From Macrostomum lignano (taxonomy: Eukaryota): 64,000 bases of DNA. Numbering within the stretch: position 1 is the first letter of the stretch; the number at the start of each line of letters is the position of its first letter. The notes under the pieces are model-generated. The model was given only the letters and a program-made list of their open reading frames with translations. It was not told the DNA's origin and made no database searches. This document shows, in pieces, positions 2 to 59,161 of the stretch. The stretch lies in contig NIVC01001000.1 in the NCBI GenBank assembly GCA_002269645.1, forward strand, positions 186,001 through 250,000. Direction: 5' to 3'. The position numbers and the translations under genes are program-made.

Positions 2-730
<729 letters not shown>

Positions 731-964
731 GTGCAAAGTGTGCGGCAAGAAATTCTATCAAGTCAAGAATCTTAAGTGGCACTCCGACTGCACTTTCTGT
801 AACGAATATTCACCCTTGCGGCGCTCCGTCATTGCCGACGTGCACAATCGGTCTTGGTCTTTAGTGTGCTCGCAATCCTTTAGCAGCTGTTTTGTCGTTT
901 TATTCATGATCTTCGGACTTTGTTGAATTCTCTTAAGGCATTCGGAAGCTAATCCAATATCCAA

Positions 965-1333
965 TTAAAGACAGCACCTAATGGCCAGTTAGTGACAGCA
1001 CTTAATGACCAGTCAGTGAGAGCACTCAATGACCAGTTAGTGACAGCACTCAATGACCAGTTAGTGACAGCACTCAATGACCAGTTAGTGACAGCACTCA
1101 ATGAGCAGCCAGTGAGAGCACTCAATGACCAGTTAGTGACAGCACTCAATGACCAGTTAGTGACAGCGCTCAATGACCAGTTAGTGACAGCACTCAATGA
1201 GCAGTTAGTGACAGCACTCAATGACCAGTTAGTGACAGCACTCAACGACCAGTTAGTGACATCACTCAATGACCAGTTAGTGACAGCACTCAATGACCAG
1301 TTAGTGACACTTACAGCAATCAATGACCAGTAG
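965..1333. repeat. 24-bp minisatellite (consensus GACCAGTTAGTGACAGCACTCAAT), ~15 copies
   Basis: Direct tandem repeats, period 24, downstream of Z1. Confidence 0.95.
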
Positions 1334-2175: not shown

Positions 2176-4231
<2,056 letters not shown>

Positions 4232-4269
4232 ATTCTCTAAAAGCATTCGGAAGCTAATCCAATATCCAA

Positions 4270-4806
4270 TTAAAGACAGCACCTAATGGCCAGTTAGTGA
4301 CAGCACTTAATGACCAGTCAGTGAGAGCACTCAATGACCAGTTAGTGACAGCACTCAATAACTAGTTAGTGACAGCACTTAATGACCAGTTATAGACAGC
4401 ACTCAATGACTCGTTAGTTACAGCACTCAATGACCAGTTAGTGACAGCACTCAATGACCAGTTAGTGACAGCGCTCAATGACCAGTTAGTGACAGCCCTC
4501 AGTGACCAGTTAGTGACAGCACTCAATGACCACTTAGTGACAGCAATCAATAACCAGTTAGTGACAGCACTCAATGACCAGTTAGAGACAGCCCTCAATG
4601 ACCAGTTAGTGACAGCACTCAATGACCAGTTAGAGACAGCACTCAATGACCAGTTAGTGACAGCACTCAATGACTAGTTAGTGACAGCACTCAATGACTA
4701 GTTAGTGACAGCACTCAAAGACCAGTTAGTGACAGCACTCAACGACCAGTTAATGACAGTACTCAACGACCAGTTAGTGACACTGACAGCAATCAATGAC
4801 CAGTAG
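4270..4806. repeat. 24-bp minisatellite, ~22 copies
   Basis: Same consensus as 965-1333. Confidence 0.95.
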
Positions 4807-5651
4807 GCACTGCATATACTATACTGCACTGTACTGCTAGATCAGCTTTTTACTTTGTTTTCCTGCTAAAGGTTTCCAATTGTTTCCGAATCATTTCCTT
4901 ACTTACTGTAGAAGTGCTTAGCACTTCAACTTTTCCTTTGACTCCCTAACTTGCGTTTCAATTTTGTGCAATTAAGCGTTATTATCGAACCTTTTCTCCC
5001 CTGTATTTATAAATTACACCGGTGGCATTCAAATTTTACTTGTTTTCTTTACTAATTGGTTTGTTTAAATGTTTGCCAGGATATTTTAATTGCTTTTTTA
5101 ATGACTTAATAGGCAACGTAAACTCATCCATGTGTGTTATTTGGGCATATAACAGCAAATCGTTTAATCGCCCCGTGTGTTTTCATTTCTGACAAATAAT
5201 TGCTTAATTGCTGCTTCTATGCTGACTACAGTATACTCGTTGGGTCAGCAATTTCGTCTTGTTTAATTTTGCAGCAAACGATAATATATTCATACGTATT
5301 GTAAGAGAAACTTCACATGCTAATGTCTTAAAAAAGTAAATTGGTGAAATTCAGTGCATGGGTAGAAAAAAATTGAAAAAATAGTTTTGCCTTTATTCTT
5401 TCAATATGAGCCTCAATGCATTCAGATGCAAATTGAATGCTTGAATATTTTGTCTCCATACTAAAATACCCAACTATCTTTATCATTAAACGGAATCTTC
5501 TGACAATACGTGTTTAAAAATCTTTTAACGTCATTCAAACTTGGATGACAAAGTGACGAAGTCTCTATCGCTCCGCATTGCAGCTCAAGGCAGAGACGGG
5601 CTTCGAGCATCGGCATCTCAGCACGGATTGTAGCCCCACAGTTTCTCAGAG

Positions 5652-7003
<1,352 letters not shown>

Positions 7004-7240
7004 TAAGTGCAAAGTGTGCGGCAAGAGATTCAATCAAGTCAGCAATCTTAAGTGGCACTCCGACTGCACTTTCTGTAGCGAATATTCACCCTTGCGGCGC
7101 TCCGTCATTGCCGACGTGCACAATCGGTCTTGGTCTTTAGTGTGCTCGCAATCCTTTAGCAGCTGTTTTGTCGTTTTATTCATGATCTTCGGACTTTGTT
7201 GAATTCTCTTAAAGCATTCGGAAGCTAATCCAATATCCAA

Positions 7241-7585
7241 TTAAAGACAGCACCTAATGGCCAGTTAGTGACAGCACTTAATGACCAGTCAGTGAGAGCA
7301 CTCAATGACCAGTTAGTGACAGCACTCAATGACCAGTTAGTGACAGCACTCAATGACCAGTTAGTGACAGCCCTCAATGACCAGTTAGTGACAGCACTCA
7401 ATGACCAGTTAGTGACAGCACTCAATGACCAGTTAGTGACAGCACTCAATGACCAGTTAGAGACAGCACTCAATGACCAGTTAGTGACAGCACTCAATGA
7501 CTAGTTAGTGACAGCACTCAATGACTAGTTAGTGACAGCACTCAATGACCAGTTAGTGACACTGACAGCAATCAATGACCAGTAG
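7241..7585. repeat. 24-bp minisatellite, ~14 copies
   Basis: Same consensus. Confidence 0.95.
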
Positions 7586-8423
7586 GCACTGCATATACTA
7601 TACTGCACTGTACTGCTAGATCAGCTTTTTACTTTGTTTTCCTGCTAAAGGTTTCCAATTGTTTCCCAATCATTTCATTACTTATTGTAGAAGTACTTAG
7701 CACTTGAACTTTTCCTTTGACTCCCTAACTTGCGTTTCAATTTTGTGCAATTAAGCGTTATTATCGAACCTTTTCTCCCCTGTATTTATAAATTACACCG
7801 GTGGCATTCAAATTTTACTTGTTTTCTTTACTAATTGTTTTGTTTAAATGTTTGCCAGGATATTTTAATTGCTTTTTTTAATGACTTAATAGGCAACGTA
7901 AACTCATCCGTGTGTGTTATTTGTGACTAAAAAAGGAAATCCTTTAATCGCTCCGTGTGTTTTCATTTCTGACAAATAATTGCTTAATTGCTGCTGCTAT
8001 GCTGACTACAGTATACTCGTTGGGTCAGCAATTTCGTCTTGTTTAATTTTGCAGCAAATGATAATATATTCATAGGTATTGTAAGGGAAACTTCACATGC
8101 TTATGTCTTAAAAAAGTAAATTGGTGAAATTCAGTGCATGGGTAGAAAAAAATTGAAAAAATAGTTTTGCCTTTATTCTTTCAATATGAGCCTCAATGCA
8201 TTCAGATGCAAATTGAATGCTTGAATATTTTGTCTCCATACTAAAATATCTTTATCATTAAACGGAATCTTCTGACAATACGTGTTTAAAAATCTTTGAA
8301 CGTCATTCAAACTTGGATGACAAAGTGACGAAGTCTCTATCGCTCCGCATTGCAGCTCAAGGCAGAGACGGGCTTCGAGCATCGGCATCTCAGCACGGAT
8401 TGTAGCCCCACAGTTTCTCAGAG

Positions 8424-9617
8424 ATGCGCCGGGGCTCTGTCGCCTGCCCGTTTTGTCCCAGGCGGTTCTGCCGCACCCGACCGACAGCGGCGCAGTACTT
8501 GCGTCATGTGCGGTCACACGGAATTGGCCGCGACTCGGAGCCTGAGGAGGCGGCTGCGACCAACTCAGAAGCTGGCAGAGCGGCGGCGGTCGAGCAGGTC
8601 GCGTCTCGCAATGAGTCAGCGATGCAGCCGTGTGCAGATGGCAGTCGTGCAGTGACAAATAGTGCTCAGGGTCTCCAGAAGCCGTTCCAGTGCGACACTT
8701 GTCAAAAGAAGTTCTCCAGGAGAAGCTATCTCAATGCTCACATTAGTGTGGTGCACAGGAAGGCAAAACCGCACAAATGCAAGCGGTGTGAAAAGTCCTT
8801 CTCAGCAAAACATGATCTGCACGTGCACAGCCGGTCTCACACTGGTGAGAGACCGTTTGAGTGCAAGGTGTGCGGCAAGAGATTCAGTGTCAGCAGCAGC
8901 CTTACTACACACTCCAGGCTGCACACAGGAGAAAAGCCATTTGAGTGCAAAGTGTGCGGCAAGAGATTCAGTGTCAGCAGCAGCCTTACTACACACTCCA
9001 GGCTGCACACTGGAGAAAAGCCATTTGAGTGCAAAGTATGCGGCAAGAGATTCAGTGTCAGCAGCCATCTCACTAAGCACTCCAGACTGCACACAGGAGA
9101 AAAGCCATTTGAGTGCAAAGTGTGCGGCAAGAGATTCAGTGACAGCAGCCATCTTACTACACACTCCAGGCTGCACACAGGAGAAAAGCCATTTGAGTGC
9201 AAAGTGTGCGGCAAGAGATTCAGTGTCAGCAGCAGCCTTACTACACACTCCAGGCTGCACACAGGAGAAAAGCCATTTGAGTGCAAAGTGTGCGACAAGA
9301 GATTCAGTGTCAGCAGCAGCCTTACTACACACTCCAGGCTGCACACAGGAGAAAAGCCATTTGAGTGCAAAGTGTGCGGCAAGAGATTCAGTTTCAGCAG
9401 CAGCCTTACTACACACTCCAGGCTGCACACAGGAGAAAAGCCATTTGAGTGCAAAGTGTGCAGCAAGAGATTCAGTGACAGCAGCAGCCTTACTACACAC
9501 TCCAGGCTGCACACAGGAGAAAAGCCATTTGAGTGCAAAGTGTGCAGCAAGAGATTCAGTGACAGCAGCAGCCTTACTACACACTCCAGGCTCCACACAA
9601 GAAGAAAAGCCATTTGA
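8424..9617 (+). CDS. Z4: multi-C2H2 zinc-finger protein, 397 aa (9 repeat fingers)
   Basis: Intact ORF ending HTRRKAI-TGA. Confidence 0.85.
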   Translation: MRRGSVACPFCPRRFCRTRPTAAQYLRHVRSHGIGRDSEPEEAAATNSEAGRAAAVEQVASRNESAMQPCADGSRAVTNSAQGLQKPFQCDTCQKKFSRRSYLNAHISVVHRKAKPHKCKRCEKSFSAKHDLHVHSRSHTGERPFECKVCGKRFSVSSSLTTHSRLHTGEKPFECKVCGKRFSVSSSLTTHSRLHTGEKPFECKVCGKRFSVSSHLTKHSRLHTGEKPFECKVCGKRFSDSSHLTTHSRLHTGEKPFECKVCGKRFSVSSSLTTHSRLHTGEKPFECKVCDKRFSVSSSLTTHSRLHTGEKPFECKVCGKRFSFSSSLTTHSRLHTGEKPFECKVCSKRFSDSSSLTTHSRLHTGEKPFECKVCSKRFSDSSSLTTHSRLHTRRKAI

Positions 9618-9855
9618 GTGCAAAGTATGCGGCAAGAGATTCAATCAAGTCAGCAATCTTAAGTGGCACTCTGACTGCACTTTCTGTAGCGAACAGTCAC
9701 CCTTGCGGCGCTCCGTCATTGCTGACGTGCACAATCGGTGTTGGTTTTAGTGTGCTCGCAACCATTTAACAGCTTTTTTGTCGTTTTATTCATGATCTTC
9801 GGATTTTGTTGAATTCTCTTAAAGTGATGCATTCGGAAGCTATTCCAAAATCCAA

Positions 9856-10488
9856 TTAGTGACAGCACCTAATGGCCAGTTAGTGACAGCACTGAATGAA
9901 CAGTTAGTGACAGCACTCAATGACCAGTTAGTGACAGCACTCAATGACCAGTTAGTGACAGCACTACATGACCAGTTAGTGACAGCACTCAATGACTAGT
10001 TAGTGACAGCACTCAAAGACCAGTTAGTGACAGCACTGAATGAACAGTTAGTGACAGCACTCAATGACCAGTTAGTGACAGCACTCAATGACCAGTTAGT
10101 GACAGCACTACATGACCAGTTAGTGACAGCACTCAATGACTAGTTAGTGACAGCACTCAATGACCAGTTAGTGACAGCACTCAATGACTAGTTAGTGACA
10201 GCACTCAAAGACCAGTTAGTGACAGCACTGAATGAACAGTTAGTGACAGCACTCAATGACCAGTTAGTGACAGCACTCAATGACCAGTTAGTGACAGCAC
10301 TACATGACCAGTTAGTGACAGCACTCAATGACTAGTTAGTGACAGCACTCAAAGACCAGTTAGTGACAGCACTCAATGACTAGTTAGTGACAGCACTCAA
10401 AGACCAGTTAGTGACAGCACTCAACGACCAGTTAGTGACAGCACTCAACGACCAGTTAGTGACACTGACAGCAATCAATGACCAGTAG
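9856..10488. repeat. 24-bp minisatellite, ~26 copies
   Basis: Same consensus. The variant-unit order is shared with the Z5 and Z6 arrays. Confidence 0.95.
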
Positions 10489-11356
10489 GCACTGAATACA
10501 CTATACCGCACTGTACTGCTAGACCAGCTTTTTACTTTGTTTTCCTGCTAAAGGTTTCCAATTGTTTCCGAATCATTTCATTAGTTACTGTAGAAGTACT
10601 TAGCACTTAAACTTTTTCTTTGACCCCTAACTTGCTTTTCAATTTTGTTCAATCAAGCGTTATTATCGAACCTTTTCTCCCCTGTATTTATAAATTACGC
10701 CGGTGGCATTCAAACTTTACTTGTTTTCCTTACTATTGCAATAATTGGTTTGTTTAAATGTTTGCCAGGATATTTTAATTGCTTTTTTAATGACTTAATA
10801 GGCAACGTAAACTCATCCATGTGTGTTTTTTATTTGTGCATATAACAGCAAATCGTTTAATCGCTCCGTGTGTTTTCATTTCTGACAAATAATTGCTTAA
10901 TTGCTGCTGCTATGCTGACTACAGTATACTCGTTGGGTCAGCAATTTCGTCTTGTTAATTTTGCAGCAAACGATAATACGAGTATATTCATAAGATCGTA
11001 TGTATTGTAAGAGAAATTTCACATGCTAATCTCTTAAAAAAGTAAATTGGTGAAATTCGGTGCACGGGTAGCAACAAAAAACAAGTTTAAAAAATAGTTA
11101 TGCCTTTATTCTTTAAATATGAACCTCAATGCATTCAGATGCTAATTGAATGCTTGAATCTTTTGTCTCCATACTAAAATATCTTTATCATTAAACGGAA
11201 TCTTCTGACAATACGTGATTAAAAATCTTTTAACGTCATTCAAACTTGGATGACAAAGTGACGAAGTCTCTATCGCTCCGCATTGCAGCTCAAGGCAGAG
11301 ACGGGCTTCGAGCATCGGCATCTCAGCACGGATTGTAACCCCACAGTTTCTCAGAG

Positions 11357-12802
11357 ATGCGCCGGGGCTCTGTCGCCTGCCCGTTTTGTCCCAGGCGGTT
11401 CTGCCGCACCCGACCGGCAGCGGCGCAGTACTTGCGTCATGTGCGGTCACACGGAATTGGCCGCGACTCGGAGCCTGAGGAGGCGGCTGCGACCAACTCA
11501 GAAGCTGGCAGAGCGGCGGCGGTCGAGCAGGTCGCGTCTCGCAATGAGTCAGCGATGCAGCCGTGTGCAGATGGCAGTCGTGCAGTGACAAATCGTGCTC
11601 AGGGTCTCCAGAAGCCGTTCCAGTGCGACACTTGTCAAAAGAAGTTCTCCAGGAGAAGCTATCTCAATGCTCACATTAGTGTGGTGCACAGGAAGGCAAA
11701 ACCGCACAAATGCAAGCGGTGTGAAAAGTCCTTCTCAGCAAAACATGATCTGCACGTGCACAGCCGGTCTCACACTGGTGAGAGACCGTTTGTGTGCAAA
11801 GTGTGCGGCAAGAGATTCAGTGTCAGCAGCAGCCTTACTACACACTCCAGGCTGCACACAGGAGAAAAGCCATTTGAGTGCAAAGTGTGCGGCAAGAGAT
11901 TCAGTTTCAGCAGCTGTCTCACTAGGCACTCAAGGCTGCACACAGGAGAAAAGCCATTTGAGTGCAAAGTGTGCGGCAAGAGATTCAGTTTCAGCAGCAG
12001 CCTTACTACACACTCCAGGCTGCACACAGGAGAAAAGCCATTTGAGTGCAAAGTGTGCAGCAAGAGATTCAGTGACAGCAGCAGCCTTACTACACACTCC
12101 AGGCTGCACACAGGAGAAAAGCCATTTGAGTGCAAAGTGTGCGGCAAGAGATTCAGTGTCAGCAGCAGCCTTACTACACACTCCAGGCTGCACACTGGAG
12201 AAAAGCCATTTGAGTGCAAAGTGTGCGGCAAGAGATTCAGTGTCAGCAGCTATCTCACTAAGCACTCCAGACTGCACACAGGAGAAAAGCCATTTGAGTG
12301 CAAAGTGTGCGGCAAGAGATTCAGTGACAGCAGCCATCTTACTACACACTCCAGGCTGCACACAGGAGAAAAGCCATTTGAGTGCAAAGTGTGCGGCAAG
12401 AGATTCAGTGTCAGCAGCAGCCTTACTACACACTCCAGGCTGCACACAGGAGAAAAGCCATTTGAGTGCAAAGTGTGCGACAAGAGATTCAGTGTCAGCA
12501 GCAGCCTTACTACACACTCCAGGCTGCACACAGGAGAAAAGCCATTTGAGTGCAAAGTGTGCGGCAAGAGATTCAGTTTCAGCAGCAGCCTTACTACACA
12601 CTCCAGGCTGCACACAGGAGAAAAGCCATTTGAGTGCAAAGTGTGCAGCAAGAGATTCAGTGACAGCAGCAGCCTTACTACACACTCCAGGCTGCACACA
12701 GGAGAAAAGCCATTTGAGTGCAAAGTGTGCAGCAAGAGATTCAGTGACAGCAGCAGCCTTACTACACACTCCAGGCTCCACACAAGAAGAAAAGCCATTT
12801 GA
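11357..12802 (+). CDS. Z5: multi-C2H2 zinc-finger protein, 481 aa (12 repeat fingers)
   Basis: Intact ORF, same translation as Z6. Confidence 0.85.
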   Translation: MRRGSVACPFCPRRFCRTRPAAAQYLRHVRSHGIGRDSEPEEAAATNSEAGRAAAVEQVASRNESAMQPCADGSRAVTNRAQGLQKPFQCDTCQKKFSRRSYLNAHISVVHRKAKPHKCKRCEKSFSAKHDLHVHSRSHTGERPFVCKVCGKRFSVSSSLTTHSRLHTGEKPFECKVCGKRFSFSSCLTRHSRLHTGEKPFECKVCGKRFSFSSSLTTHSRLHTGEKPFECKVCSKRFSDSSSLTTHSRLHTGEKPFECKVCGKRFSVSSSLTTHSRLHTGEKPFECKVCGKRFSVSSYLTKHSRLHTGEKPFECKVCGKRFSDSSHLTTHSRLHTGEKPFECKVCGKRFSVSSSLTTHSRLHTGEKPFECKVCDKRFSVSSSLTTHSRLHTGEKPFECKVCGKRFSFSSSLTTHSRLHTGEKPFECKVCSKRFSDSSSLTTHSRLHTGEKPFECKVCSKRFSDSSSLTTHSRLHTRRKAI

Positions 12803-13041
12803 GGGCAAAGTATGCGGCAAGAGATTCAATCAAGTCAGCAATCTTAAGTGGCACTCTGACTGCACTTTCTGTAGCGAACAGTCACCCTTGCGGCGCTCCG
12901 TCATTGCTGACGTGCACAATCGGTGTTGGTTTTTAGTGTGCTCGCAACCATTTAACAGCTTTTTTGTCGTTTTATTCATGATCTTCGGACTTTGTTGAAT
13001 TCTCTTAAAGTGATGCATTCGGAAGCTATTCAAAAATCCAA

Positions 13042-13674
13042 TTAGTGACAGCACCTAATGGCCAGTTAGTGACAGCACTGAATGAACAGTTAGTGACAGC
13101 ACTCAATGACCAGTTAGTGACAGCACTCAATGACCAGTTAGTGACAGCACTACATGACCAGTTAGTGACAGCACTCAATGACTAGTTAGTGACAGCACTC
13201 AAAGACCAGTTAGTGACAGCACTGAATGAACAGTTAGTGACAGCACTCAATGACCAGTTAGTGACAGCACTCAATGACCAGTTAGTGACAGCACTACATG
13301 ACCAGTTAGTGACAGCACTCAATGACTAGTTAGTGACAGCACTCAATGACCAGTTAGTGACAGCACTCAATGACTAGTTAGTGACAGCACTCAAAGACCA
13401 GTTAGTGACAGCACTGAATGAACAGTTAGTGACAGCACTCAATGACCAGTTAGTGACAGCACTCAATGACCAGTTAGTGACAGCACTACATGACCAGTTA
13501 GTGACAGCACTCAATGACTAGTTAGTGACAGCACTCAAAGACCAGTTAGTGACAGCACTCAATGACTAGTTAGTGACAGCACTCAAAGACCAGTTAGTGA
13601 CAGCACTCAACGACCAGTTAGTGACAGCACTCAACGACCAGTTAGTGACACTGACAGCAATCAATGACCAGTAG
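13042..13674. repeat. 24-bp minisatellite, ~26 copies
   Basis: Same consensus. Confidence 0.95.
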
Positions 13675-14542
13675 GCACTGAATACACTATACCGCACTGT
13701 ACTGCTAGACCAGCTTTTTACTTTGTTTTCCTGCTAAAGGTTTCCAATTGTTTCCGAATCATTTCATTAGTTACTGTAGAAGTACTTAGCACTTAAACTT
13801 TTTCTTTGACCCCTAACTTGCTTTTCAATTTTGTTCAATCAAGCGTTATTATCGAACCTTTTCTCCCCTGTATTTATAAATTACGCCGGTGGCATTCAAA
13901 CTTTACTTGTTTTCCTTACTATTGCAATAATTGGTTTGTTTAAATGTTTGCCAGGATATTTTAATTGCTTTTTTAATGACTTAATAGGCAACGTAAACTC
14001 ATCCATGTGTGTTTTTTATTTGTGCATATAACAGCAAATCGTTTAATCGCTCCGTGTGTTTTCATTTCTGACAAATAATTGCTTAATTGCTGCTGCTATG
14101 CTGACTACAGTATACTCGTTGGGTCAGCAATTTCGTCTTGTTAATTTTGCAGCAAACGATAATACGAGTATATTCATAAGATCGTATGTATTGTAAGAGA
14201 AATTTCACATGCTAATCTCTTAAAAAAGTAAATTGGTGAAATTCGGTGCACGGGTAGCAACAAAAAACAAGTTTAAAAAATAGTTATGCCTTTATTCTTT
14301 AAATATGAACCTCAATGCATTCAGATGCTAATTGAATGCTTGAATCTTTTGTCTCCATACTAAAATATCTTTATCATTAAACGGAATCTTCTGACAATAC
14401 GTGATTAAAAATCTTTTAACGTCATTCAAACTTGGATGACAAAGTGACGAAGTCTCTATCGCTCCGCATTGCAGCTCAAGGCAGAGACGGGCTTCGAGCA
14501 TCGGCATCTCAGCACGGATTGTAACCCCACAGTTTCTCAGAG

Positions 14543-15988
14543 ATGCGCCGGGGCTCTGTCGCCTGCCCGTTTTGTCCCAGGCGGTTCTGCCGCACCCGAC
14601 CGGCAGCGGCGCAGTACTTGCGTCATGTGCGGTCACACGGAATTGGCCGCGACTCGGAGCCTGAGGAGGCGGCTGCGACCAACTCAGAAGCTGGCAGAGC
14701 GGCGGCGGTCGAGCAGGTCGCGTCTCGCAATGAGTCAGCGATGCAGCCGTGTGCAGATGGCAGTCGTGCAGTGACAAATCGTGCTCAGGGTCTCCAGAAG
14801 CCGTTCCAGTGCGACACTTGTCAAAAGAAGTTCTCCAGGAGAAGCTATCTCAATGCTCACATTAGTGTGGTGCACAGGAAGGCAAAACCGCACAAATGCA
14901 AGCGGTGTGAAAAGTCCTTCTCAGCAAAACATGATCTGCACGTGCACAGCCGGTCTCACACTGGTGAGAGACCGTTTGTGTGCAAAGTGTGCGGCAAGAG
15001 ATTCAGTGTCAGCAGCAGCCTTACTACACACTCCAGGCTGCACACAGGAGAAAAGCCATTTGAGTGCAAAGTGTGCGGCAAGAGATTCAGTTTCAGCAGC
15101 TGTCTCACTAGGCACTCAAGGCTGCACACAGGAGAAAAGCCATTTGAGTGCAAAGTGTGCGGCAAGAGATTCAGTTTCAGCAGCAGCCTTACTACACACT
15201 CCAGGCTGCACACAGGAGAAAAGCCATTTGAGTGCAAAGTGTGCAGCAAGAGATTCAGTGACAGCAGCAGCCTTACTACACACTCCAGGCTGCACACAGG
15301 AGAAAAGCCATTTGAGTGCAAAGTGTGCGGCAAGAGATTCAGTGTCAGCAGCAGCCTTACTACACACTCCAGGCTGCACACTGGAGAAAAGCCATTTGAG
15401 TGCAAAGTGTGCGGCAAGAGATTCAGTGTCAGCAGCTATCTCACTAAGCACTCCAGACTGCACACAGGAGAAAAGCCATTTGAGTGCAAAGTGTGCGGCA
15501 AGAGATTCAGTGACAGCAGCCATCTTACTACACACTCCAGGCTGCACACAGGAGAAAAGCCATTTGAGTGCAAAGTGTGCGGCAAGAGATTCAGTGTCAG
15601 CAGCAGCCTTACTACACACTCCAGGCTGCACACAGGAGAAAAGCCATTTGAGTGCAAAGTGTGCGACAAGAGATTCAGTGTCAGCAGCAGCCTTACTACA
15701 CACTCCAGGCTGCACACAGGAGAAAAGCCATTTGAGTGCAAAGTGTGCGGCAAGAGATTCAGTTTCAGCAGCAGCCTTACTACACACTCCAGGCTGCACA
15801 CAGGAGAAAAGCCATTTGAGTGCAAAGTGTGCAGCAAGAGATTCAGTGACAGCAGCAGCCTTACTACACACTCCAGGCTGCACACAGGAGAAAAGCCATT
15901 TGAGTGCAAAGTGTGCAGCAAGAGATTCAGTGACAGCAGCAGCCTTACTACACACTCCAGGCTCCACACAAGAAGAAAAGCCATTTGA
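14543..15988 (+). CDS. Z6: multi-C2H2 zinc-finger protein, 481 aa (12 repeat fingers)
   Basis: Copy of Z5 exactly 3186 bp downstream. Confidence 0.8.
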   Translation: MRRGSVACPFCPRRFCRTRPAAAQYLRHVRSHGIGRDSEPEEAAATNSEAGRAAAVEQVASRNESAMQPCADGSRAVTNRAQGLQKPFQCDTCQKKFSRRSYLNAHISVVHRKAKPHKCKRCEKSFSAKHDLHVHSRSHTGERPFVCKVCGKRFSVSSSLTTHSRLHTGEKPFECKVCGKRFSFSSCLTRHSRLHTGEKPFECKVCGKRFSFSSSLTTHSRLHTGEKPFECKVCSKRFSDSSSLTTHSRLHTGEKPFECKVCGKRFSVSSSLTTHSRLHTGEKPFECKVCGKRFSVSSYLTKHSRLHTGEKPFECKVCGKRFSDSSHLTTHSRLHTGEKPFECKVCGKRFSVSSSLTTHSRLHTGEKPFECKVCDKRFSVSSSLTTHSRLHTGEKPFECKVCGKRFSFSSSLTTHSRLHTGEKPFECKVCSKRFSDSSSLTTHSRLHTGEKPFECKVCSKRFSDSSSLTTHSRLHTRRKAI

Positions 15989-16227
15989 GGGCAAAGTATG
16001 CGGCAAGAGATTCAATCAAGTCAGCAATCTTAAGTGGCACTCTGACTGCACTTTCTGTAGCGAACAGTCACCCTTGCGGCGCTCCGTCATTGCTGACGTG
16101 CACAATCGGTGTTGGTTTTTAGTGTGCTCGCAACCATTTAACAGCTTTTTTGTCGTTTTATTCATGATCTTCGGACTTTGTTGAATTCTCTTAAAGTGAT
16201 GCATTCGGAAGCTATTCAAAAATCCAA

Positions 16228-16860
16228 TTAGTGACAGCACCTAATGGCCAGTTAGTGACAGCACTGAATGAACAGTTAGTGACAGCACTCAATGACCAGT
16301 TAGTGACAGCACTCAATGACCAGTTAGTGACAGCACTACATGACCAGTTAGTGACAGCACTCAATGACTAGTTAGTGACAGCACTCAAAGACCAGTTAGT
16401 GACAGCACTGAATGAACAGTTAGTGACAGCACTCAATGACCAGTTAGTGACAGCACTCAATGACCAGTTAGTGACAGCACTACATGACCAGTTAGTGACA
16501 GCACTCAATGACTAGTTAGTGACAGCACTCAATGACCAGTTAGTGACAGCACTCAATGACTAGTTAGTGACAGCACTCAAAGACCAGTTAGTGACAGCAC
16601 TGAATGAACAGTTAGTGACAGCACTCAATGACCAGTTAGTGACAGCACTCAATGACCAGTTAGTGACAGCACTACATGACCAGTTAGTGACAGCACTCAA
16701 TGACTAGTTAGTGACAGCACTCAAAGACCAGTTAGTGACAGCACTCAATGACTAGTTAGTGACAGCACTCAAAGACCAGTTAGTGACAGCACTCAACGAC
16801 CAGTTAGTGACAGCACTCAACGACCAGTTAGTGACACTGACAGCAATCAATGACCAGTAG
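16228..16860. repeat. 24-bp minisatellite, ~26 copies
   Basis: Same consensus. Confidence 0.95.
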
Positions 16861-17728
16861 GCACTGAATACACTATACCGCACTGTACTGCTAGACCAGC
16901 TTTTTACTTTGTTTTCCTGCTAAAGGTTTCCAATTGTTTCCGAATCATTTCATTAGTTACTGTAGAAGTACTTAGCACTTAAACTTTTTCTTTGACCCCT
17001 AACTTGCTTTTCAATTTTGTTCAATCAAGCGTTATTATCGAACCTTTTCTCCCCTGTATTTATAAATTACGCCGGTGGCATTCAAACTTTACTTGTTTTC
17101 CTTACTATTGCAATAATTGGTTTGTTTAAATGTTTGCCAGGATATTTTAATTGCTTTTTTAATGACTTAATAGGCAACGTAAACTCATCCATGTGTGTTT
17201 TTTATTTGTGCATATAACAGCAAATCGTTTAATCGCTCCGTGTGTTTTCATTTCTGACAAATAATTGCTTAATTGCTGCTGCTATGCTGACTACAGTATA
17301 CTCGTTGGGTCAGCAATTTCGTCTTGTTAATTTTGCAGCAAACGATAATACGAGTATATTCATAAGATCGTATGTATTGTAAGAGAAATTTCACATGCTA
17401 ATCTCTTAAAAAAGTAAATTGGTGAAATTCGGTGCACGGGTAGCAACAAAAAACAAGTTTAAAAAATAGTTATGCCTTTATTCTTTAAATATGAACCTCA
17501 ATGCATTCAGATGCAAATTGAATGCTTGAATCTTTTGTCTCCATACTAAAATATCTTTATCATTAAACGGAATCTTCTGACAATACGTGATTAAAAATCT
17601 TTTAACGTCATTCAAACTTGGATGACAAAGTGACGAAGTCTCTATCGCTCCGCATTGCAGCTCAAGGCAGAGACGGGCTTCGAGCATCGGCATCTCAGCA
17701 CGGATTGTAACCCCACAGTTTCTCAGAG

Positions 17729-19258
17729 ATGCGCCGGGGCTCTGTCGCCTGCCCGTTTTGTCCCAGGCGGTTCTGCCGCACCCGACCGGCAGCGGCGCAG
17801 TACTTGCGTCATGTGCGGTCACACGGAATTGGCCGCGACTCGGAGCCTGAGGAGGCGGCTGCGACCAACTCAGAAGCTGGCAGAGCGGCGGCGGTCGAGC
17901 AGGTCGCGTCTCGCAATGAGTCAGCGATGCAGCCGTGTGCAGATGGCAGTCGTGCAGTGACAAATCGTGCTCAGGGTCTCCAGAAGCCGTTCCAGTGCGA
18001 CACTTGTCAAAAGAAGTTCTCCAGGAGAAGCTATCTCAATGCTCACATTAGTGTGGTGCACAGGAAGGCAAAACCGCACAAATGCAAGCGGTGTGAAAAG
18101 TCCTTCTCAGCAAAACATGATCTGCACGTGCACAGCCGGTCTCACACTGGTGAGAGACCGTTTGTGTGCAAAGTGTGCGGCAAGAGATTCAGTGTCAGCA
18201 GCAGCCTTACTACACACTCCAGGCTGCACACAGGAGAAAAGCCATTTGAGTGCAAAGTGTGCGGCAAGAGATTCAGTTTCAGCAGCTGTCTCACTAGGCA
18301 CTCAAGGCTGCACACAGGAGAAAAGCCATTTGAGTGCAAAGTGTGCGGCAAGAGATTCAGTTTCAGCAGCAGCCTTACTACACACTCCAGGCTGCACACA
18401 GGAGAAAAGCCATTTGAGTGCAAAGTGTGCAGCAAGAGATTCAGTGACAGCAGCAGCCTTACTACACACTCCAGGCTGCACACAGGAGAAAAGCCATTTG
18501 AGTGCAAAGTGTGCGGCAAGAGATTCAGTTTCAGCAGCAGCCTTACTACACACTCCAGGCTGCACACAGGAGAAAAGCCATTTGAGTGCAAAGTGTGCAG
18601 CAAGAGATTCAGTGACAGCAGCCATCTTACTACACACTCCAGGCTGCACACAGGAGAAAAGCCATTTGAGTGCAAAGTATGCGGCAAGAGATTCTGTGTC
18701 AACAGCCATCTCACTAAGCACTCAAGGCTGCACACAGGAGAAAAGCCATTTGAATGCAAAGTATGCGGCAAGAGATTCAGTGTCAACAGCAGCCTTACTA
18801 CACACTCCAGGCTGCACACAGGAGAAAAGCCATTTGAGTGCAAAGTGTGCGGCAAGAGATTCTGTGTCAACAGCCATCTCACTAGGCACTCAAGGCTGCA
18901 CACAGGAGAAAAGCCATTTGAGTGCAAAGTATGCGGCAAGAGATTCAGTGTCAGCAGCCATCTCACTAGGCACTCAAGGCTGCACACAGGAGAAAAGCCA
19001 TTTGAGTGCAAAGTGTGCGGCAAGAGATTCAGTTTCAGCAGCAGCCTTACTACACACTCCAGGCTGCACACAGGAGAAAAGCCATTTGAGTGCAAAGTGT
19101 GCAGCAAGAGATTCAGTGACAGCAGCAGCCTTACTACACACTCCAGGCTGCACACAGGAGAAAAGCCATTTGAGTGCAAAGTATGCGGCAAGAGATTCAG
19201 TGTCAGCAGCCATCTCACTAGGCACTCAAGGCTCCACACAAGAAGAAAAGCCATTTGA
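17729..19258 (+). CDS. Z7: multi-C2H2 zinc-finger protein, 509 aa (13 repeat fingers)
   Basis: Intact ORF ending HTRRKAI-TGA. Confidence 0.85.
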   Translation: MRRGSVACPFCPRRFCRTRPAAAQYLRHVRSHGIGRDSEPEEAAATNSEAGRAAAVEQVASRNESAMQPCADGSRAVTNRAQGLQKPFQCDTCQKKFSRRSYLNAHISVVHRKAKPHKCKRCEKSFSAKHDLHVHSRSHTGERPFVCKVCGKRFSVSSSLTTHSRLHTGEKPFECKVCGKRFSFSSCLTRHSRLHTGEKPFECKVCGKRFSFSSSLTTHSRLHTGEKPFECKVCSKRFSDSSSLTTHSRLHTGEKPFECKVCGKRFSFSSSLTTHSRLHTGEKPFECKVCSKRFSDSSHLTTHSRLHTGEKPFECKVCGKRFCVNSHLTKHSRLHTGEKPFECKVCGKRFSVNSSLTTHSRLHTGEKPFECKVCGKRFCVNSHLTRHSRLHTGEKPFECKVCGKRFSVSSHLTRHSRLHTGEKPFECKVCGKRFSFSSSLTTHSRLHTGEKPFECKVCSKRFSDSSSLTTHSRLHTGEKPFECKVCGKRFSVSSHLTRHSRLHTRRKAI

Positions 19259-19497
19259 GTGCAAAGTGTGCGGCAAGAGATTCAATCAAGTCACCAATCT
19301 CAAGTGGCACTCCGACTGCATTTTCTGTAGCGAATATTCACCCTTGCGGCGCTCCGTCATTGCCGACGTGCACAATCGGTCTTGGTCCTTAGTGTGCTCG
19401 CAATCCTTTAGCAGCTTTTTTGTCGTTTTATTCATGATATTCGGACTTTGTTTAATTCTCTCAAAGTGATGCATTCGGAAGCTAATCCAATATCCAA

Positions 19498-20583
19498 TTA
19501 GTGACAGCACCTAATGTCCAGTTAGTGACAGCACTTAATGACCTGTCAGTGACAGCACTCAATGACCACTTAGAGACAGCAATCAATGACCAGTTACTGA
19601 CAGCACTCAATGACCATTTAGTGACAGCAATCAGTGACCAGTTACTGACAGCACTCAACGACCAGTTAGTGACGGCACTCAATGACTAGTTAGTGACAGC
19701 ACTCAATGACCAGTTAGTGAAAGCACTCAATGACTAGTTAGTGACAGCACTCAATGACCAGTTAGTGACAGCACTCAATGACCAGTTAGTGACAGCACTC
19801 AATGACCTGTTAGTGACAGCACTTAATGACTAGTTAGTGACAGCACTTAATGACCAGTTAGTGACAGCACTCCATGACCCGTTAGGACAGCAATCAATGA
19901 CCAGTTAGTGACAGCATTCAATGACCAGTTAGTGACAGCACTCAATGACCTGTTAGTGATAGCACTCAATGACTAGTTAGTGACACTAATCAATGACCAG
20001 TTAGTGACAGCACTAATGACCAGTTAGTGACAGCATTCAATGACCAGTTAGTGACAGCACTCAATGACCTGTTAGTGATAGCACTCAATGACTAGTTAGT
20101 GACACTAATCAATGACCAGTTAGTGACAGCACTTAATGACCAGTTAGTGACAGCACTCAATAACTAGTTAGTGACAGCACCTAATGAGCAGTTAGTGACA
20201 GCACTCAATCAACAGTTAGTGACAGCACTCAATGACCAGTTAGTGACAGCACTCAATGACCAGTTAGTGACAGCACTCAATAACTAGTTAGTGACAGCAC
20301 CTAATGACCAGTTAGTGACAGCACTCAATGACTAGTTGGAGACAGCACCTAATGACCAGTTAGTGACAGCACTCAATGACCCGTTAGGACAGCAATCAAT
20401 GACCAGTTAGTGACAGCACTCAATGACTAGTTAGTGACAGCACTCAATGACTAGTTAGTGACAGCACTCAATGACCAGTTAGTGACAGCACTCAATGACC
20501 AGTTAGTGACAGCACTCAAAGACCAGTTAGTGACAGCACTCAAAGACCAGTTAGTGACACTGACAGCCATCAATGACCAGTAG
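19498..20583. repeat. 24-bp minisatellite, ~45 copies, more diverged
   Basis: Same consensus with more variant and 23-bp units. Confidence 0.95.
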
Positions 20584-26700: not shown

Positions 26701-29700
26701 GTCGCACGTTGTTCGCATCGGCCGACACGAGGAGGTGATCGAATGCTACGAGCGGGCAGGCGACCTCTACATCCAGCACCTGCAGGAGTCCCAGGCTCAG
26801 GTGCTGGATAAGCGAACTGTCACCGTTAGCGAAGAGGTCGGGCACGCTCTACAGCAGTCGCCTATATTGCGGATGTCGCATGGCGATTTGACTGGAGCTA
26901 TTCACCGGTTGAGACAGGTGCACCGCTGTAGGCTTGGTTAATCGGGTTTAGGGTTGTTGTCGCCTACAGCTTGATGTTGAAGTTACAGCCTCCAGCCAGC
27001 CTCCCAGATTACCCAGATTAAGCTAACAGTCTCCCAGATCCTCAGAGGAGCTACCAGCCTCCCAGATCCCCCAGATTAAGCTACCAGCCTCTCAGATCCC
27101 CCTGATTAAGCTATTAGCCTAGCTCCCAGATTACCCAGAATAAGCTACCAGCCTCCCAGATCCTCAGAGGAGCTACCAGCCTCCCAGATCCCCCAGATTA
27201 AGCTACCAGATCCCCCAGATTAAGCTACCAGCCTTCCAGATCCCCCAGGCCCCAAATTAAGCCACCAGCCTCCCAGATCTCCCAGATTAAGCTACCAGCC
27301 TCCGCAGCTCCCTTCTTGGCCTGCCTTTTGGCGCGTTGTTTAGCGCCTTCTTGACCAGCCCAGATCCTCCAAATTAAGCTACCAGCCTCCCAGATCCCCC
27401 AGATTAAGCTATCAGCCTCCCAGATCTCCCATACGAAGCCACCAGCCTCCCAGATCTCCCAGATTAAGCTACCAGCCTCCGCAGCTCTCTCAGATTAAGC
27501 TACCAGCCTCCCCAGCTCCCCCAGATTCTCCAAATTAAGCTACCAGCCTCCCAGATCCCCCAGATAAGCTATCAGCCTCCCAGATCTCCCATACGAAGCT
27601 ACCAGCCTCCCATATCTCTCAGATTTGAGTTTGTACTTTTAAATTCGTTTTTGAATCGTTCCTCGAAGTGCCTCTTGATTAGGCACTCTATCTGGCCATC
27701 CCTTGGCTCCCCCAGGTGCTCCGCTGTCACGAGACCAAGTGCAGCCGGTCGATCCGGCAGACGCTTTCCCGGCAGCTGGCGGAAATCTTGCTCCGCGGTG
27801 TCTCGCCAGAAACCTACCGCAAGCCGGAGCTGTCCAGAGCTCGCACAATCGGCGTCTATCAGCACTCAGGCGACGACCTGCTGGTGCCGGACTCGCCGCT
27901 GCAGGAGGCCATCCTGCTGCTGATGATCTCGGAGCTGATTGCCTTCCAACAGGCTGTGCTGTCACGTGACCAGGACACTCGCCTAGAAAGGAAAATTGCT
28001 TTTGAAAACACTGTGGCGGTGTACGATTTACTCTGCGTAGCCCTGTCTAGGGTGGGGGCCTACGCTCAGTTGACTGAGATTCTTGAGCACGCTATGAAAT
28101 TTTCGTTTGGCGAATCGCACATCTGGCTGCAGTTCGGCTTGGCTTTGATCTCGGCTGGCAATCTGAGCAGGGGCTTGGCCGTGTTTCAGGTGAGCTTGCT
28201 GTAGTGCGATTAATTACTACTGCTAGTAATAGTAGTAGTATTACTACTAGCAGTTAGTAATAGTATTAATAGTAGTAGTAATAATAGTAATAGTAATAAT
28301 AATAATAGTAATGATAATAATTTTAATAGCAGTAGTAATATTAAAAGCAGCAGTAGTAGTAGTTGTTGTTGTTAAACGGGGGTGGGAAGCTTGGCTACCC
28401 GCGGATCAGCCCTTGGGGGGGGGGGGCTCTGCCGCAGAGGGGCACTACCAGGGGCCCAGACATTAGTAGTACAGGGCCCGAGATACCCCGAGACATGGAA
28501 TTGGGCCCCAGCTTAAGCTAGGGAAAGAGCGAGGGACTTCAAGCCTACGGTACAAGACACCGCCAAACCAACAGTGGAATCAGGGACGGTGCTAGGACCG
28601 AGTCACCCAGGCTACCCCCCAGCAGACAGGTCCTCGGGAGTGCGCGAAAAACAGAATTGGATTATTACTGAAAAGCCGTCCAAGAGCGGGAAACCCAGAA
28701 GTCTTGGAAAGGGCTAACAGGGGCGGGCAAACTTTTTAGAGAGTGGGCCAAATAATACTTTGTTGAACAGCCGCGGGCCGGAGCTCAATAACGAGGCAAC
28801 TTTCTTGGTAGATAGAAATACAGTTTAGTTTATTTGCTTATCAAGCTTTTAATAGTATGTTTCATTACAATTAGTGAAATACATGTATCATTGAATATGC
28901 AGATATTTGCTTTATATAAAGTCGAATTAACAAATGAGAAGTTTAAGTAAAAATGACGTTTAAAAAATTACGTAACTGCTCTTACATCCGATGGCAATAA
29001 CATCAGCGCTGATGAAAAAGTTATGAGTTACTTGCTATAGATGATACAGTTGATATTTAATGAAGGAAAATAGTACTAGCAATAGAAAAATGGACAATAA
29101 AAAGTGACATTGACAGGGAATTATAATAGGAAAGATACAAAAAGAATACATTGACAAAATGCTCGAACAATGATGGGCAGTGATAGCATGCCGTTAGAGG
29201 AGATATTAGTGACAAATTTTGGTTGACAGACATGCCCAATCTACAGTCTGTTAGCAGAAATTCAGTCATTTGAACTTAATGAGATGGGTGGTACTGTTTG
29301 CCCCGAAGAAGTGCTTCAAAATCCGGCTTGATAGACAAAGTAGACAGCAGAAGGATATCATTAAGATGGCGGTCTGAAATCTGGGAACGAAGGCGAGATT
29401 TGGTGAAGCTCATTTTGGAAAACAGCTGTTCGCAGCAATAGGTGCTCCCAAACATGGCCACAATATGTTGAACATGGGCGATGTAGTTTGGAAAGTTGTT
29501 GGATGGGAGAACAAGGTCCCGAAAGAAGGCTAGAGGGGAGGAAGTGCGGAACTTTGCCTTCAGTCCATCGTTGCACTGCAGCTCAACCAACTCCATCTGC
29601 AGGGCAGCTGGGGCATCATCCACCGAGCAGTCAAAGGGAGCAGTGAGGAGCTTGAAGTCCACAGCCAGGCGTCTGACTCCTGCAAAGCGGGAGGCAAACT

Positions 29701-35975: not shown

Positions 35976-36861
35976 ATGGCCGTTTGTTTAGGGTATAATA
36001 ATTCATTGAAGTTGCTTCATGTACTTGTAAAGGCCCATCTTAAAATGTCTTCGAAATGACGAAATTAAATTATGCATAGTTTAATTCCTAGAAAATACAT
36101 GCTGGTACTGAAGATAAACCTTTTTCCATTATTTGTTAACAATTCATCATTTTAGTTGCCTTTTCTTGTTTTGATTAACGATTATAATTTAATATGTAAT
36201 AAAGTTATGCATCTAAATTAACTATATAGTTTTTATAGTAGCAACCTGTGTCAATAGATCGTTGTGACTATAATTAGTATTTTTTAGGATTTTATATTTA
36301 TTATTACGAGTATTATTACTCTGCTGCGCTACATACATAATCGATTTTCTTGCATCAAGTTTATGGCCTGATTGAAACTGATTGTGGCAAATGAATCCGA
36401 TATCACAGTTCACTGGTTTAATTACTAATTGCTAAACTAATAAACTGAAAACGGCTATTATTGCTTCAAACTTGTGATAATAATATAGTCTCAGTGTGTG
36501 ATCATGTCACAGTTATCTCAAACATTTACTTTACTTTATACAGTGTAGATTATAACTATTTTCTAAGGATTTTCCGCATATACAAAATCCACACCTACCC
36601 CCAGCCAAGTCTACTGCAATCCACATCCACCTAACTTTCTGAGCCTTATGAATATCGATAGAGCTATAAGAAAGGCACAAAATATTCCCAGTAAAATATG
36701 AACATCGGGTCTGTCTCCTATCGAAAGCAATAACAACTTTAGTGCTGAAAAAATAAAACTTCCTATCTCCGTAGTGTATTTTTCGGCGAAAAGTTGCCTT
36801 CAAAAAATTGCCATAGATTTTGAGTGTTGCATCCTTCTACTTAAGTTGTCCTTGCTCACAT

Positions 36862-48722: not shown

Positions 48723-59161
<10,439 letters not shown>

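What the first reader, a model, noticed from the sequence alone, without database searches (positions are those of the whole stretch)
8890..18530. Z5/Z6 are recombinant genes: 5' half of Z7 fused to 3' half of Z4
Seen: Z5/Z6 share with Z7 the leader markers (TGTAACCC, TNRAQ, PFVCK) and repeat fingers 1-4 (VSSS-T, FSSC-R, FSSS-T, DSSS-T). Their fingers 5-12 match Z4 fingers 2-9 (including the CACACTGGAG linker and the CDK finger, with one H>Y change), as do the tail, minisatellite variant order and spacer. The crossover maps to about 12080-12157. Established: this is the product expected from unequal crossover between tandem paralogs. Inference: a direct snapshot of a new 12-finger specificity being created.
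Basis: seen in the sequence. Interest (0 to 1): 0.72.

Follow-up and report, generated by a model that had tools for sequence, protein, structure and literature searches.

The report
Hybrid zinc-finger genes from unequal crossover
In a tandem array of zinc-finger genes of the flatworm Macrostomum lignano, two identical genes are clean hybrids of their two neighbours, made by the textbook mispair-and-exchange mechanism; it is a tidy new example of a known process, and the copy number still needs checking against raw reads.

Summary
The window is Macrostomum lignano (assembly Mlig_3_7, contig NIVC01001000.1). It holds seven tandem single-ORF C2H2 zinc-finger genes. A 3186-bp unit is repeated 3.03 times over 8891-18529. 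Z5 and Z6 are identical. Each equals Z7 (upstream spacer, head, fingers 1-4) up to 12157, and equals Z4 (fingers 2-9, tail, minisatellite, spacer) from 12076 on. The switch lies in one 82-bp tract shared by all three. Z5/Z6 side with Z7 at 85 of 85 diagnostic sites on the 5' side, and with Z4 at 28 of 30 on the 3' side. A chimera predicted from Z7 and Z4 differs from Z5 by 2 nt (one synonymous, one H299Y at a DNA-contact position). This is the anti-Lepore topology: upstream parent, hybrid, downstream parent. The seven differences among the three copies fit two successive unequal exchanges. The hybrid therefore drifted (0.22%) before it was duplicated again, so it is not brand new. The same pattern would arise if the assembler had added a spurious third unit, so three versus two copies is unverified. 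No independent sequence of the locus could be found. Expression, function and new specificity are untested. Verdict: a new member of a known kind; interest is modest.

The parts
8424..9617 (+). Z4, upstream parental gene (397 aa; 9 repeat fingers)
   Evidence: ORF and finger parsing. Its upstream spacer is only 90.9% identical to those of Z5/Z6/Z7.
8891..8972 (+). Exchange tract in Z4 (3' end of finger 1 plus 5' end of finger 2)
   Evidence: Identical to 12076-12157, 15262-15343 and 18448-18529.
8891..12075 (+). Copy 1 of the ~3186-bp duplicated unit: Z4 fingers 2-9, tail, minisatellite, spacer, then Z5 head and fingers 1-4
   Evidence: Exact-run analysis at periods 3185 and 3186. It differs from copy 2 at 6 sites, all before 9847.
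9852..10464 (+). 24-bp minisatellite downstream of Z4 (25.5 copies), identical to those downstream of Z5 and Z6
11357..12802 (+). Z5, hybrid gene (481 aa; 12 repeat fingers)
   Evidence: Equals Z7 17729-18529 plus Z4 8973-9617, apart from 2 nt (12223 synonymous; 12251 H299Y).
12076..12157 (+). Crossover interval in Z5, bounded by the helix -1 codons of fingers 4 and 5
   Evidence: The last mismatch to Z4 is at 12075. The first mismatch to Z7 is at 12158.
12076..15261 (+). Copy 2 of the unit
   Evidence: One mismatch to copy 3 (14329 T against 17515 A).
12251..12251 (+). C>T (CAT>TAT, His>Tyr) at helix position +3 of finger 6; derived and shared with Z6 (15437)
   Evidence: TAT is absent from the 40 independent fingers.
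13033..14328 (+). Interval that must hold the second exchange (between copy A and copy B), covering the minisatellite and spacer
   Evidence: Inferred from the distribution and polarity of the seven inter-copy differences.
14543..15988 (+). Z6, second copy of the hybrid gene, with an ORF identical to Z5
15262..15343 (+). Crossover interval as copied into Z6
15262..18447 (+). Copy 3 of the unit: Z6 fingers 5-12, tail, minisatellite, spacer, then Z7 head and fingers 1-4
17729..19258 (+). Z7, downstream parental gene (509 aa; 13 repeat fingers), the last gene of the array
   Evidence: It is annotated as a 509-aa CDS in the public record.
18448..18529 (+). Exchange tract in Z7 (3' end of finger 4 plus 5' end of finger 5); right-hand end of the repeated region

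Best explanation
Z5 and Z6 are hybrid genes made by unequal homologous exchange (NAHR) within a head-to-tail array of paralogous C2H2 zinc-finger genes.

**Step 1.** Two copies of the array (sister chromatids or homologues) paired out of register by one gene. Their 84-bp finger repeats were also shifted by three fingers, so Z7 finger 4 lay on Z4 finger 1. In that register the whole Z4 finger array aligns with Z7 fingers 4-12 at 93% identity. An exchange resolved inside an 82-bp tract of perfect identity. It gave Z4 - [Z7 5' part + Z4 3' part] - Z7, and duplicated the 3186 bp between the two breakpoints. This is the same topology as haemoglobin anti-Lepore.

**Step 2.** The two unit copies drifted apart at seven sites (0.22%). 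One of these is His>Tyr at a base-contacting position of the hybrid.

**Step 3.** A second unequal exchange between the two unit copies, somewhere in 13033-14328, produced a third unit and hence a second identical hybrid gene.

**What is shown and what is inferred.** Shown: the mosaic, the single switch interval, the unit arithmetic and the polarity of the differences. Inferred: the order of events, that the exchange was a crossover, and that the hybrid protein binds a new composite DNA target built from Z7's first four fingers and Z4's last eight.
For: - **Unit arithmetic.** The repeated span 8891-18529 is 3 x 3186 plus about 82 bp, with only two boundaries.
- **Flank identity.** The Z5 upstream spacer is 100% / 99.9% identical to those of Z6 / Z7, against 90.9% to that of Z4. 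The Z5 tail is 98.8% identical to Z4's, against 91.0% to Z7's.
- **Diagnostic sites.** Z5/Z6 follow Z7 at 85 of 85 sites on the 5' side and Z4 at 28 of 30 on the 3' side.
- **Predicted chimera.** It has exactly the length of Z5 and differs by 2 nt.
- **Switch interval.** It is bounded by the -1 codons of two adjacent fingers.
- **Pairing register.** Register +3 pairs the whole Z4 array with Z7 at 93.1% identity.
- **Polarity of differences.** Derived alleles are shared by copies 2 and 3 in the left 956 bp, and by copies 1 and 2 at offset 2254. No site has copy 2 alone, as the [A][B/A][B] product requires.
- **Signs that the arrays are functional.** The ORFs are intact, and amino-acid variation among 40 fingers is concentrated at helix positions -1, +3 and +6.
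- **Gaps.** There are no Ns in the window.
Against: - All evidence comes from one PacBio-CLR/Canu/Pilon assembly of a repeat-rich neopolyploid genome (PMC5730564). No independent copy of the locus could be retrieved.
- Six of the seven differences lie in the first 30% of the unit, and none in the minisatellite (P = 0.004). A simple clock on a single event does not predict this.
- One of the differences is a 1-bp change in a T run, a typical consensus error.
- The exchange used an 82-bp identical tract, although tracts of 175-210 bp exist in other registers.
- Crossover cannot be told apart from replication-based template switching on the product alone.
Confidence: 0.8

Rival explanations
1. 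Assembly artefact. In one version the third unit (one of Z5/Z6) was added by the assembler to a true two-unit structure. In the more drastic version, the Z7-to-Z4 junction itself is a false join through the near-identical finger repeats, or between homeologous or haplotypic copies.
For: - The assembly is Canu 1.4 on noisy CLR reads, polished with short reads. The genome is more than half repetitive, with 180 Mb of >=95% identical duplicated blocks.
- Copy 2 is exactly a mosaic of copies 1 and 3 with no private change. A spurious extra unit would look just like this.
- One difference is a homopolymer-length change.
- No second sequence source confirms the locus.
Against: - The contig is gap-free here and the units are in perfect phase.
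- Copy 1 and copies 2/3 differ by five substitutions, with derived states on both sides. So reads of two distinct 'Z4-type 3' parts' exist.
- A false join would have to jump backwards in a 93%-identical array, yet leave a clean 82-bp junction and a complete in-frame ORF.
- The repeat (9.6 kb) is within reach of CLR reads at 130x coverage.
Confidence: 0.12
2. The same tandem duplication arose by replication-based template switching or sister-chromatid slippage (fork stalling and re-priming on the 82-bp homology), not by a meiotic crossover.
For: The product is identical to that of NAHR. The homology used (82 bp) is short for classical homologous recombination, and longer identical tracts were available.
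Against: - No insertions, inversions or templated patches lie at the junction.
- The flanking arrays pair over 756 bp at 93% identity, which suits homologous recombination.
- The second event needs ordinary exchange between two 3.2-kb near-identical units.
Confidence: 0.1
3. Whole Z7 units were duplicated first. Gene conversion from Z4 then overwrote their 3' parts, without any unequal crossover at the observed junction.
For: Conversion and cassette sharing are evident in this array. A two-finger F-S-T/D-S-T cassette is 206-222 bp identical in Z2, Z4 and twice in Z7.
Against: - The conversion tract would have to run from finger 5 through the tail, the 613-bp minisatellite and the spacer, in two genes, and end without a second boundary.
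- Only two boundaries exist, and the span is 3 units plus 82 bp exactly.
- The spacer downstream of Z4 is already identical to the others from 9847.
Confidence: 0.04
4. The Z5 type is ancestral, and Z4 and Z7 are the derived genes, each a deletion-type hybrid with a lost neighbour.
For: Mosaic similarity alone has no direction.
Against: - This needs two independent deletions whose junctions fall by accident in the same 82-bp tract.
- Z5, Z6 and their spacers are 99.9-100% identical, whereas ordinary neighbours in the array differ by 9-10% in spacers. This marks Z5 and Z6 as the young copies.
- Z5/Z6 carry derived states at 12251, 12804 and 13032.
Confidence: 0.03

Closest known systems
Haemoglobin anti-Lepore (and Lepore) hybrid globin genes; likewise red/green opsin hybrids (from established knowledge, not tested here)
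   Same: - Unequal homologous exchange between adjacent tandem paralogues.
- The duplication product carries a hybrid gene, made of the 5' part of the downstream parent and the 3' part of the upstream parent, lying between both intact parents.
- There is one switch interval of shared identity.
   Different: - Here the exchange is inside an internal 84-bp coding repeat, three repeats out of register. The hybrid therefore also has a new repeat number (12, against 9 and 13).
- The hybrid unit was then duplicated again.
- The organism is a flatworm, and no phenotype is known.
Tandem clusters of poly-zinc-finger genes in vertebrates (KRAB-ZNF clusters)
   Same: - Local tandem duplication by unequal crossing over or gene conversion, followed by change in the finger array (PMC5363842).
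- TGEKP-linked C2H2 arrays.
- Variation concentrated at base-contacting residues.
   Different: - There is no KRAB or other known effector domain.
- The N-terminal 87 aa are found only in a handful of Macrostomum-type proteins among 1.84 billion representatives.
- The genes are single-ORF units only about 3 kb apart, each followed by a 24-bp minisatellite.
PRDM9 zinc-finger minisatellite
   Same: - 84-bp finger repeats with 92-95% DNA identity.
- Fingers are shuffled, gained and lost by unequal exchange.
- Hypervariable positions are -1, +3 and +6.
   Different: - There is no PR/SET, KRAB or SSXRD domain.
- The exchange here is between two different genes, not between alleles of one.
- There is no evidence of a role in recombination.

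Membership tests
Krueppel-type C2H2 poly-zinc-finger protein | Tandem C-x2-C-x12-H-x3-H fingers that match Pfam zf-C2H2 | tested here: met
   PF00096 E = 9e-71 with 13 stretches; PF13465 E = 1e-103.
Krueppel-type C2H2 poly-zinc-finger protein | Conserved TGEKP-type linkers between fingers | tested here: met
   TGE(K/R)P precedes every repeat finger.
KRAB zinc-finger proteins (KZFP) | N-terminal KRAB domain | tested here: not met
   No PF01352 hit in Z5 or in its 139-aa head.
PRDM9-type proteins | PR/SET domain upstream of the finger minisatellite | tested here: not met
   Pfam finds only zinc-finger families.
PRDM9-type proteins | Minisatellite-like 84-bp finger repeats with variation focused at helix positions -1, +3 and +6 | tested here: met
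   TRF reports period 84 with 92-95% matches. The codon table of 40 fingers is.
Anti-Lepore-type product of unequal crossover (NAHR tandem duplication with a hybrid gene) | Parents in direct tandem orientation flank the hybrid | tested here: met
   The order is Z4 - Z5/Z6 - Z7, all on the + strand.
Anti-Lepore-type product of unequal crossover (NAHR tandem duplication with a hybrid gene) | The hybrid is the 5' part of the downstream parent plus the 3' part of the upstream parent, flanks included | tested here: met
   85 of 85 diagnostic sites on the 5' side and 28 of 30 on the 3' side.
Anti-Lepore-type product of unequal crossover (NAHR tandem duplication with a hybrid gene) | A single switch interval lying in sequence identical in both parents | tested here: met
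   The interval is the 82 bp at 12076-12157.
Anti-Lepore-type product of unequal crossover (NAHR tandem duplication with a hybrid gene) | The repeated span equals n units plus the homology tract, with only two boundaries | tested here: met
   8891-18529 is 3 x 3186 plus about 82 bp.
Anti-Lepore-type product of unequal crossover (NAHR tandem duplication with a hybrid gene) | Reciprocal deletion (Lepore-type) or pre-duplication haplotype present in the population | not testable with these tools
   No other sequence of this locus could be reached. L003 and L004 are diverged paralogous arrays.
Anti-Lepore-type product of unequal crossover (NAHR tandem duplication with a hybrid gene) | Junctions and copy number confirmed by single molecules | not testable with these tools
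   Raw reads are not available here. The assembly method is described.

The most novel reading that the evidence does not exclude
A Macrostomum-specific zinc-finger family with no known effector domain may be evolving in the same arms-race mode as vertebrate KZFP/PRDM9 arrays. The signs would be contact-residue diversification plus finger shuffling between neighbouring genes. On this reading the hybrid unit was retained, acquired a contact-residue change (H299Y) and is now being amplified because its new composite specificity is useful, for example against the abundant LTR retroelements of this genome.
Probability: 0.2. Interest if true: 0.55.

Novelty: new member of a known kind. Interest (0 to 1): 0.3.

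Why it matters
If reads confirm it, the locus is an unusually clean natural experiment. Both parents and the hybrid sit side by side, and the hybrid differs from a simple join of its parents by one amino acid. The modularity of long finger arrays could therefore be tested directly, by asking whether the hybrid's DNA target is the sum of the parental half-sites. It also shows that between-gene finger shuffling, known from vertebrate ZNF clusters, operates in a flatworm family that has no KRAB domain. It does not reveal a new mechanism.

Tried and rejected
**Searches for an independent copy or alternative haplotype of the locus**
- Exact-protein look-ups of Z5 and Z4 found nothing. The look-up of Z7 found only the window's own contig.
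- The 161-aa CDS annotated at Z5/Z6 is found only on this contig and forms a one-member cluster.
- A full-length Z5 protein search was swamped by generic vertebrate ZNFs. The only close hit was a fused gene model from another array (P0001, 70% identity).
- A search with the head only gave two diverged paralogues. Their contigs, L003 and L004, are 83-93% identical arrays with unrelated flanks, so they are not homeologues of this locus.
- A search with an exon of the neighbouring TTC7 gene, meant to reach a homeologous contig, returned nothing.
- The 2023 subgenome paper still uses Mlig_3_7, so no newer assembly was identified.

**Explanations rejected**
- Gene conversion alone, and 'Z5 is ancestral', were rejected on boundary count and on the coincidence of the junctions (see rivals).
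- Chance resemblance was rejected because identity is 99.9-100% over kilobases, against 90-92% between ordinary neighbouring units.


Full report
**Where the window comes from.** The 509-aa Z7 protein is on record only in GCA_002269645.1, contig NIVC01001000.1. The literature identifies this as the Mlig_3_7 assembly of the free-living flatworm Macrostomum lignano, line DV1. The window corresponds to about 186001-250000 of that contig. The assembly was made from 130x PacBio CLR reads with Canu 1.4, polished with Pilon and scaffolded with SSPACE. The genome is more than half repetitive and partly duplicated, with 180 Mb in blocks that are >=95% identical (PMC5730564).

**What is there.** The first 20 kb hold a head-to-tail array of single-ORF C2H2 zinc-finger genes on the + strand:

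| Gene | Coordinates | Size / fingers |
|---|---|---|
| Z1 | 35-926 | cut by the window start |
| Z2 | 2176-3357 | 393 aa, 9 repeat fingers |
| Z3 | 5652-6842 | 396 aa, 9 repeat fingers |
| Z4 | 8424-9617 | 397 aa, 9 repeat fingers |
| Z5 | 11357-12802 | 481 aa, 12 repeat fingers |
| Z6 | 14543-15988 | 481 aa, 12 repeat fingers |
| Z7 | 17729-19258 | 509 aa, 13 repeat fingers |

- Each unit has a 139-aa head, which includes two divergent canonical fingers.
- The head is followed by an array of 84-bp finger repeats that are 92-95% identical in DNA.
- A short tail follows the fingers.
- Next comes a 24-bp minisatellite of 13 to 44 copies.
- Last is a spacer of about 0.9 kb.
- Pfam finds only zinc-finger families, with no KRAB or other effector domain.
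- The first 87 residues have only four strong matches among 1.84 billion representative proteins. The three whose source is known are Macrostomum lignano proteins.

**Check of the observation.**
- The Z5 unit and the Z6 unit (3186 bp each) differ at one base.
- Sequence identity at a period of 3186 bp (3185 before a 1-bp indel) runs from 8891 to 18529. That span is 3 x 3186 plus about 82 bp.
- Z5 is identical to Z7 from the upstream spacer up to 12157.
- Z5 matches Z4 from 12076 through fingers, tail, minisatellite and spacer.
- The last mismatch to Z4 is at 12075, in the helix -1 codon of finger 4 (GAC against GTC).
- The first mismatch to Z7 is at 12158, in the helix -1 codon of finger 5 (GTC against TTC).
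- The switch therefore lies in one 82-bp tract that is identical in all three genes.
- In aligned flanks, Z4 and Z7 differ at 85 columns on the 5' side (spacer, head, finger 1). Z5 and Z6 follow Z7 at all 85.
- In the 3' tail, Z4 and Z7 differ at 30 columns, and Z5 follows Z4 at 28.
- A windowed comparison shows the same single switch.
- A chimera written as Z7 17729-18529 plus Z4 8973-9617 has exactly the length of Z5. It differs at 2 nt, one synonymous and one giving H299Y.
- Background identity between ordinary neighbouring units is 90-92% in spacers and tails, so this cannot be chance.

**What it is.** The arrangement is upstream parent, then a hybrid with the 5' part of the downstream parent and the 3' part of the upstream parent, then the downstream parent. 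The intervening spacer is duplicated and there are only two boundaries. This is the duplication product of an unequal homologous exchange, as in haemoglobin anti-Lepore (established knowledge). The pairing register that produced it puts Z7 finger 4 on Z4 finger 1. In that register all nine Z4 fingers align with Z7 at 93.1% identity.

**History read from the seven differences among the three unit copies.**
- Six differences separate copy 1 from copies 2 and 3, and all lie in the first 956 bp of the unit. They are:
  - 9038 A/G (synonymous)
  - 9066 C/T (His>Tyr)
  - 9619 T/G
  - a 1-bp change in a T run
  - 9804 T/C
  - 9846 C/A
- The seventh (11143 and 14329 T against 17515 A) separates copies 1 and 2 from copy 3.
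- Comparison with the other paralogues polarises the differences. Both lineages carry derived states:
  - Copies 2/3: 12804 G, 13032 A and 12251 T
  - Z4: 9804 T and the shortened T run
  - The spacers upstream of Z5 and Z6: T at 11143 and 14329
- This is the pattern expected if a first exchange gave two units, A and B, which drifted by 0.22%. A second unequal exchange between A and B, somewhere in 13033-14328, then gave [A][B/A][B].
- The hybrid gene therefore existed for some time before it was duplicated. No change has accumulated since the second event.

**Caveats.**
- Copy 2 has no private difference. A spurious unit added by the assembler to a true [A][B] structure would look the same, so three copies as against two cannot be settled from the sequence.
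- The existence of the hybrid itself is better supported, because two distinct versions of the 'Z4-type 3' part' are present. It still rests on one CLR assembly.
- Six of the seven differences lie in 30% of the unit, and none in the minisatellite (binomial P = 0.004). This is unexplained. Later homogenisation, exchange between diverged haplotypes, or polishing errors are all possible.
- I found no independent sequence of the locus. L003 and L004 are diverged paralogous arrays elsewhere in the genome.

**Function.**
- Among 40 independent fingers (Z2, Z3, Z4, Z7), amino-acid variation is concentrated at three helix positions, the canonical base-contacting positions:
  - -1: V / D / F / I
  - +3: S / H / N / C
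  - +6: T / R / K
- Most other codons are invariant or vary synonymously.
- This pattern, together with the intact ORFs, suggests DNA-binding arrays under diversification. A new combination of fingers would then plausibly mean a new composite target.
- That remains an inference. Nothing here tests expression or binding.
- The public record annotates Z7 as a 509-aa CDS. At Z5/Z6 it annotates only a 161-aa CDS in another reading frame.

**Comparison and novelty.**
- Duplication of poly-zinc-finger genes by unequal crossing over or gene conversion, followed by change in the finger array, is the accepted model for vertebrate KZFP clusters (PMC5363842).
- Finger shuffling by unequal exchange is well known for PRDM9.
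- The present genes fail the KRAB and PR/SET membership tests, so they work like those systems without belonging to them.
- I found no paper on such arrays in Macrostomum.
- The finding is a clean new example of a known process in an unusual lineage, not a new kind of system.

**Scores.** Interest is 0.3. The best explanation has confidence 0.8.

Noticed in passing
window 35-926 (Z1): Z1, cut by the window start, has an in-frame stop in its fourth finger (GEKPF*CKVC) and a 3-nt insertion in a later finger. It is probably a pseudogene.
   Followed up: partly
window 3357-4061 (downstream of the Z2 stop): The 84-bp finger repeats of Z2 continue for about eight more units past the stop codon, with several frameshifts and stops. 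Z2 looks like a truncated gene that once had about 17 fingers.
   Followed up: partly
window 9596-9700, 12781-12885, 15967-16071, 19237-19341: The Z4-Z7 ORFs end the same way: a 1-nt insertion in a TGEKP linker gives HTRRKAI*. It is followed, out of frame, by a relic finger ([19 protein letters not shown]...). The family's stop codon is therefore an old, conserved frameshift.
   Followed up: partly
window 3082-3301, 9336-9545, 18289-18514, 18961-19190 (and the copies in Z5/Z6): A two-finger cassette (contact residues F-S-T then D-S-T) is 206-222 bp identical in Z2 fingers 7-8, Z4 fingers 7-8, and twice in Z7 (fingers 3-4 and 11-12). This is evidence of further intra- and inter-genic exchange or conversion.
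   Followed up: partly
all finger arrays, window 2593-19237: Amino-acid variation among fingers is concentrated at helix positions -1, +3 and +6, and to a lesser degree at the residue after the second Cys (G/S/D). Other codons vary mostly synonymously. This pattern resembles PRDM9/KZFP arrays.
   Followed up: partly
window 12513-12998 and 15699-16184: The public record annotates 161-aa CDSs here in a reading frame different from the zinc-finger frame. It also carries a 230-aa spliced model at Z4 and an 87-aa model spanning Z3 to Z5. These are probably annotation artefacts in repeated sequence.
   Followed up: no
window 970-1309, 4275-4782, 7246-7561, 9852-10464, 13038-13650, 16224-16836, 19494-20559: A 24-bp minisatellite (GACAGCACTCAATGACCAGTTAGT) follows every gene, with 13 to 44 copies. 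The same minisatellite occurs in a paralogous array on another contig (L004 2390-3167).
   Followed up: partly
window 41063-45054 (+): ORFs of an LTR retroelement of the Ty3/gypsy kind are present: zinc knuckle, aspartyl protease, RT, RNase H and integrase. They are read as several ORFs in different frames. I did not examine them further or reconstruct the element.
   Followed up: no
window 23707-~35000 (+) and 29276-31130 (-): A TTC7-like gene (TTC7_N and TPR exons at 27716-28204 and 32834-33430) starts about 4.4 kb downstream of Z7. Two long antisense ORFs lie between those two exons. One has a Spin-doc-type zinc finger, and they look like a domesticated or decaying DNA-transposon gene.
   Followed up: no
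window 39295-39984 (+): An ORF with a fibrinogen C-terminal globular domain (Pfam E = 2.5e-32).
   Followed up: no
window 36820-37653, 52738-54120, 57440-59161, 60219-61455, 62541-63588: There are long minisatellite arrays with strong strand-composition skew. They stay open in several frames (for example PTHTCPNQHVPQST and CLSV repeats). This matches the reported 15% tandem-repeat content of this genome.
   Followed up: no
L004 5695-9235: The paralogous zinc-finger array on contig NIVC01000975.1 is interrupted by long ORFs that look like a retroelement. I did not analyse them.
   Followed up: no
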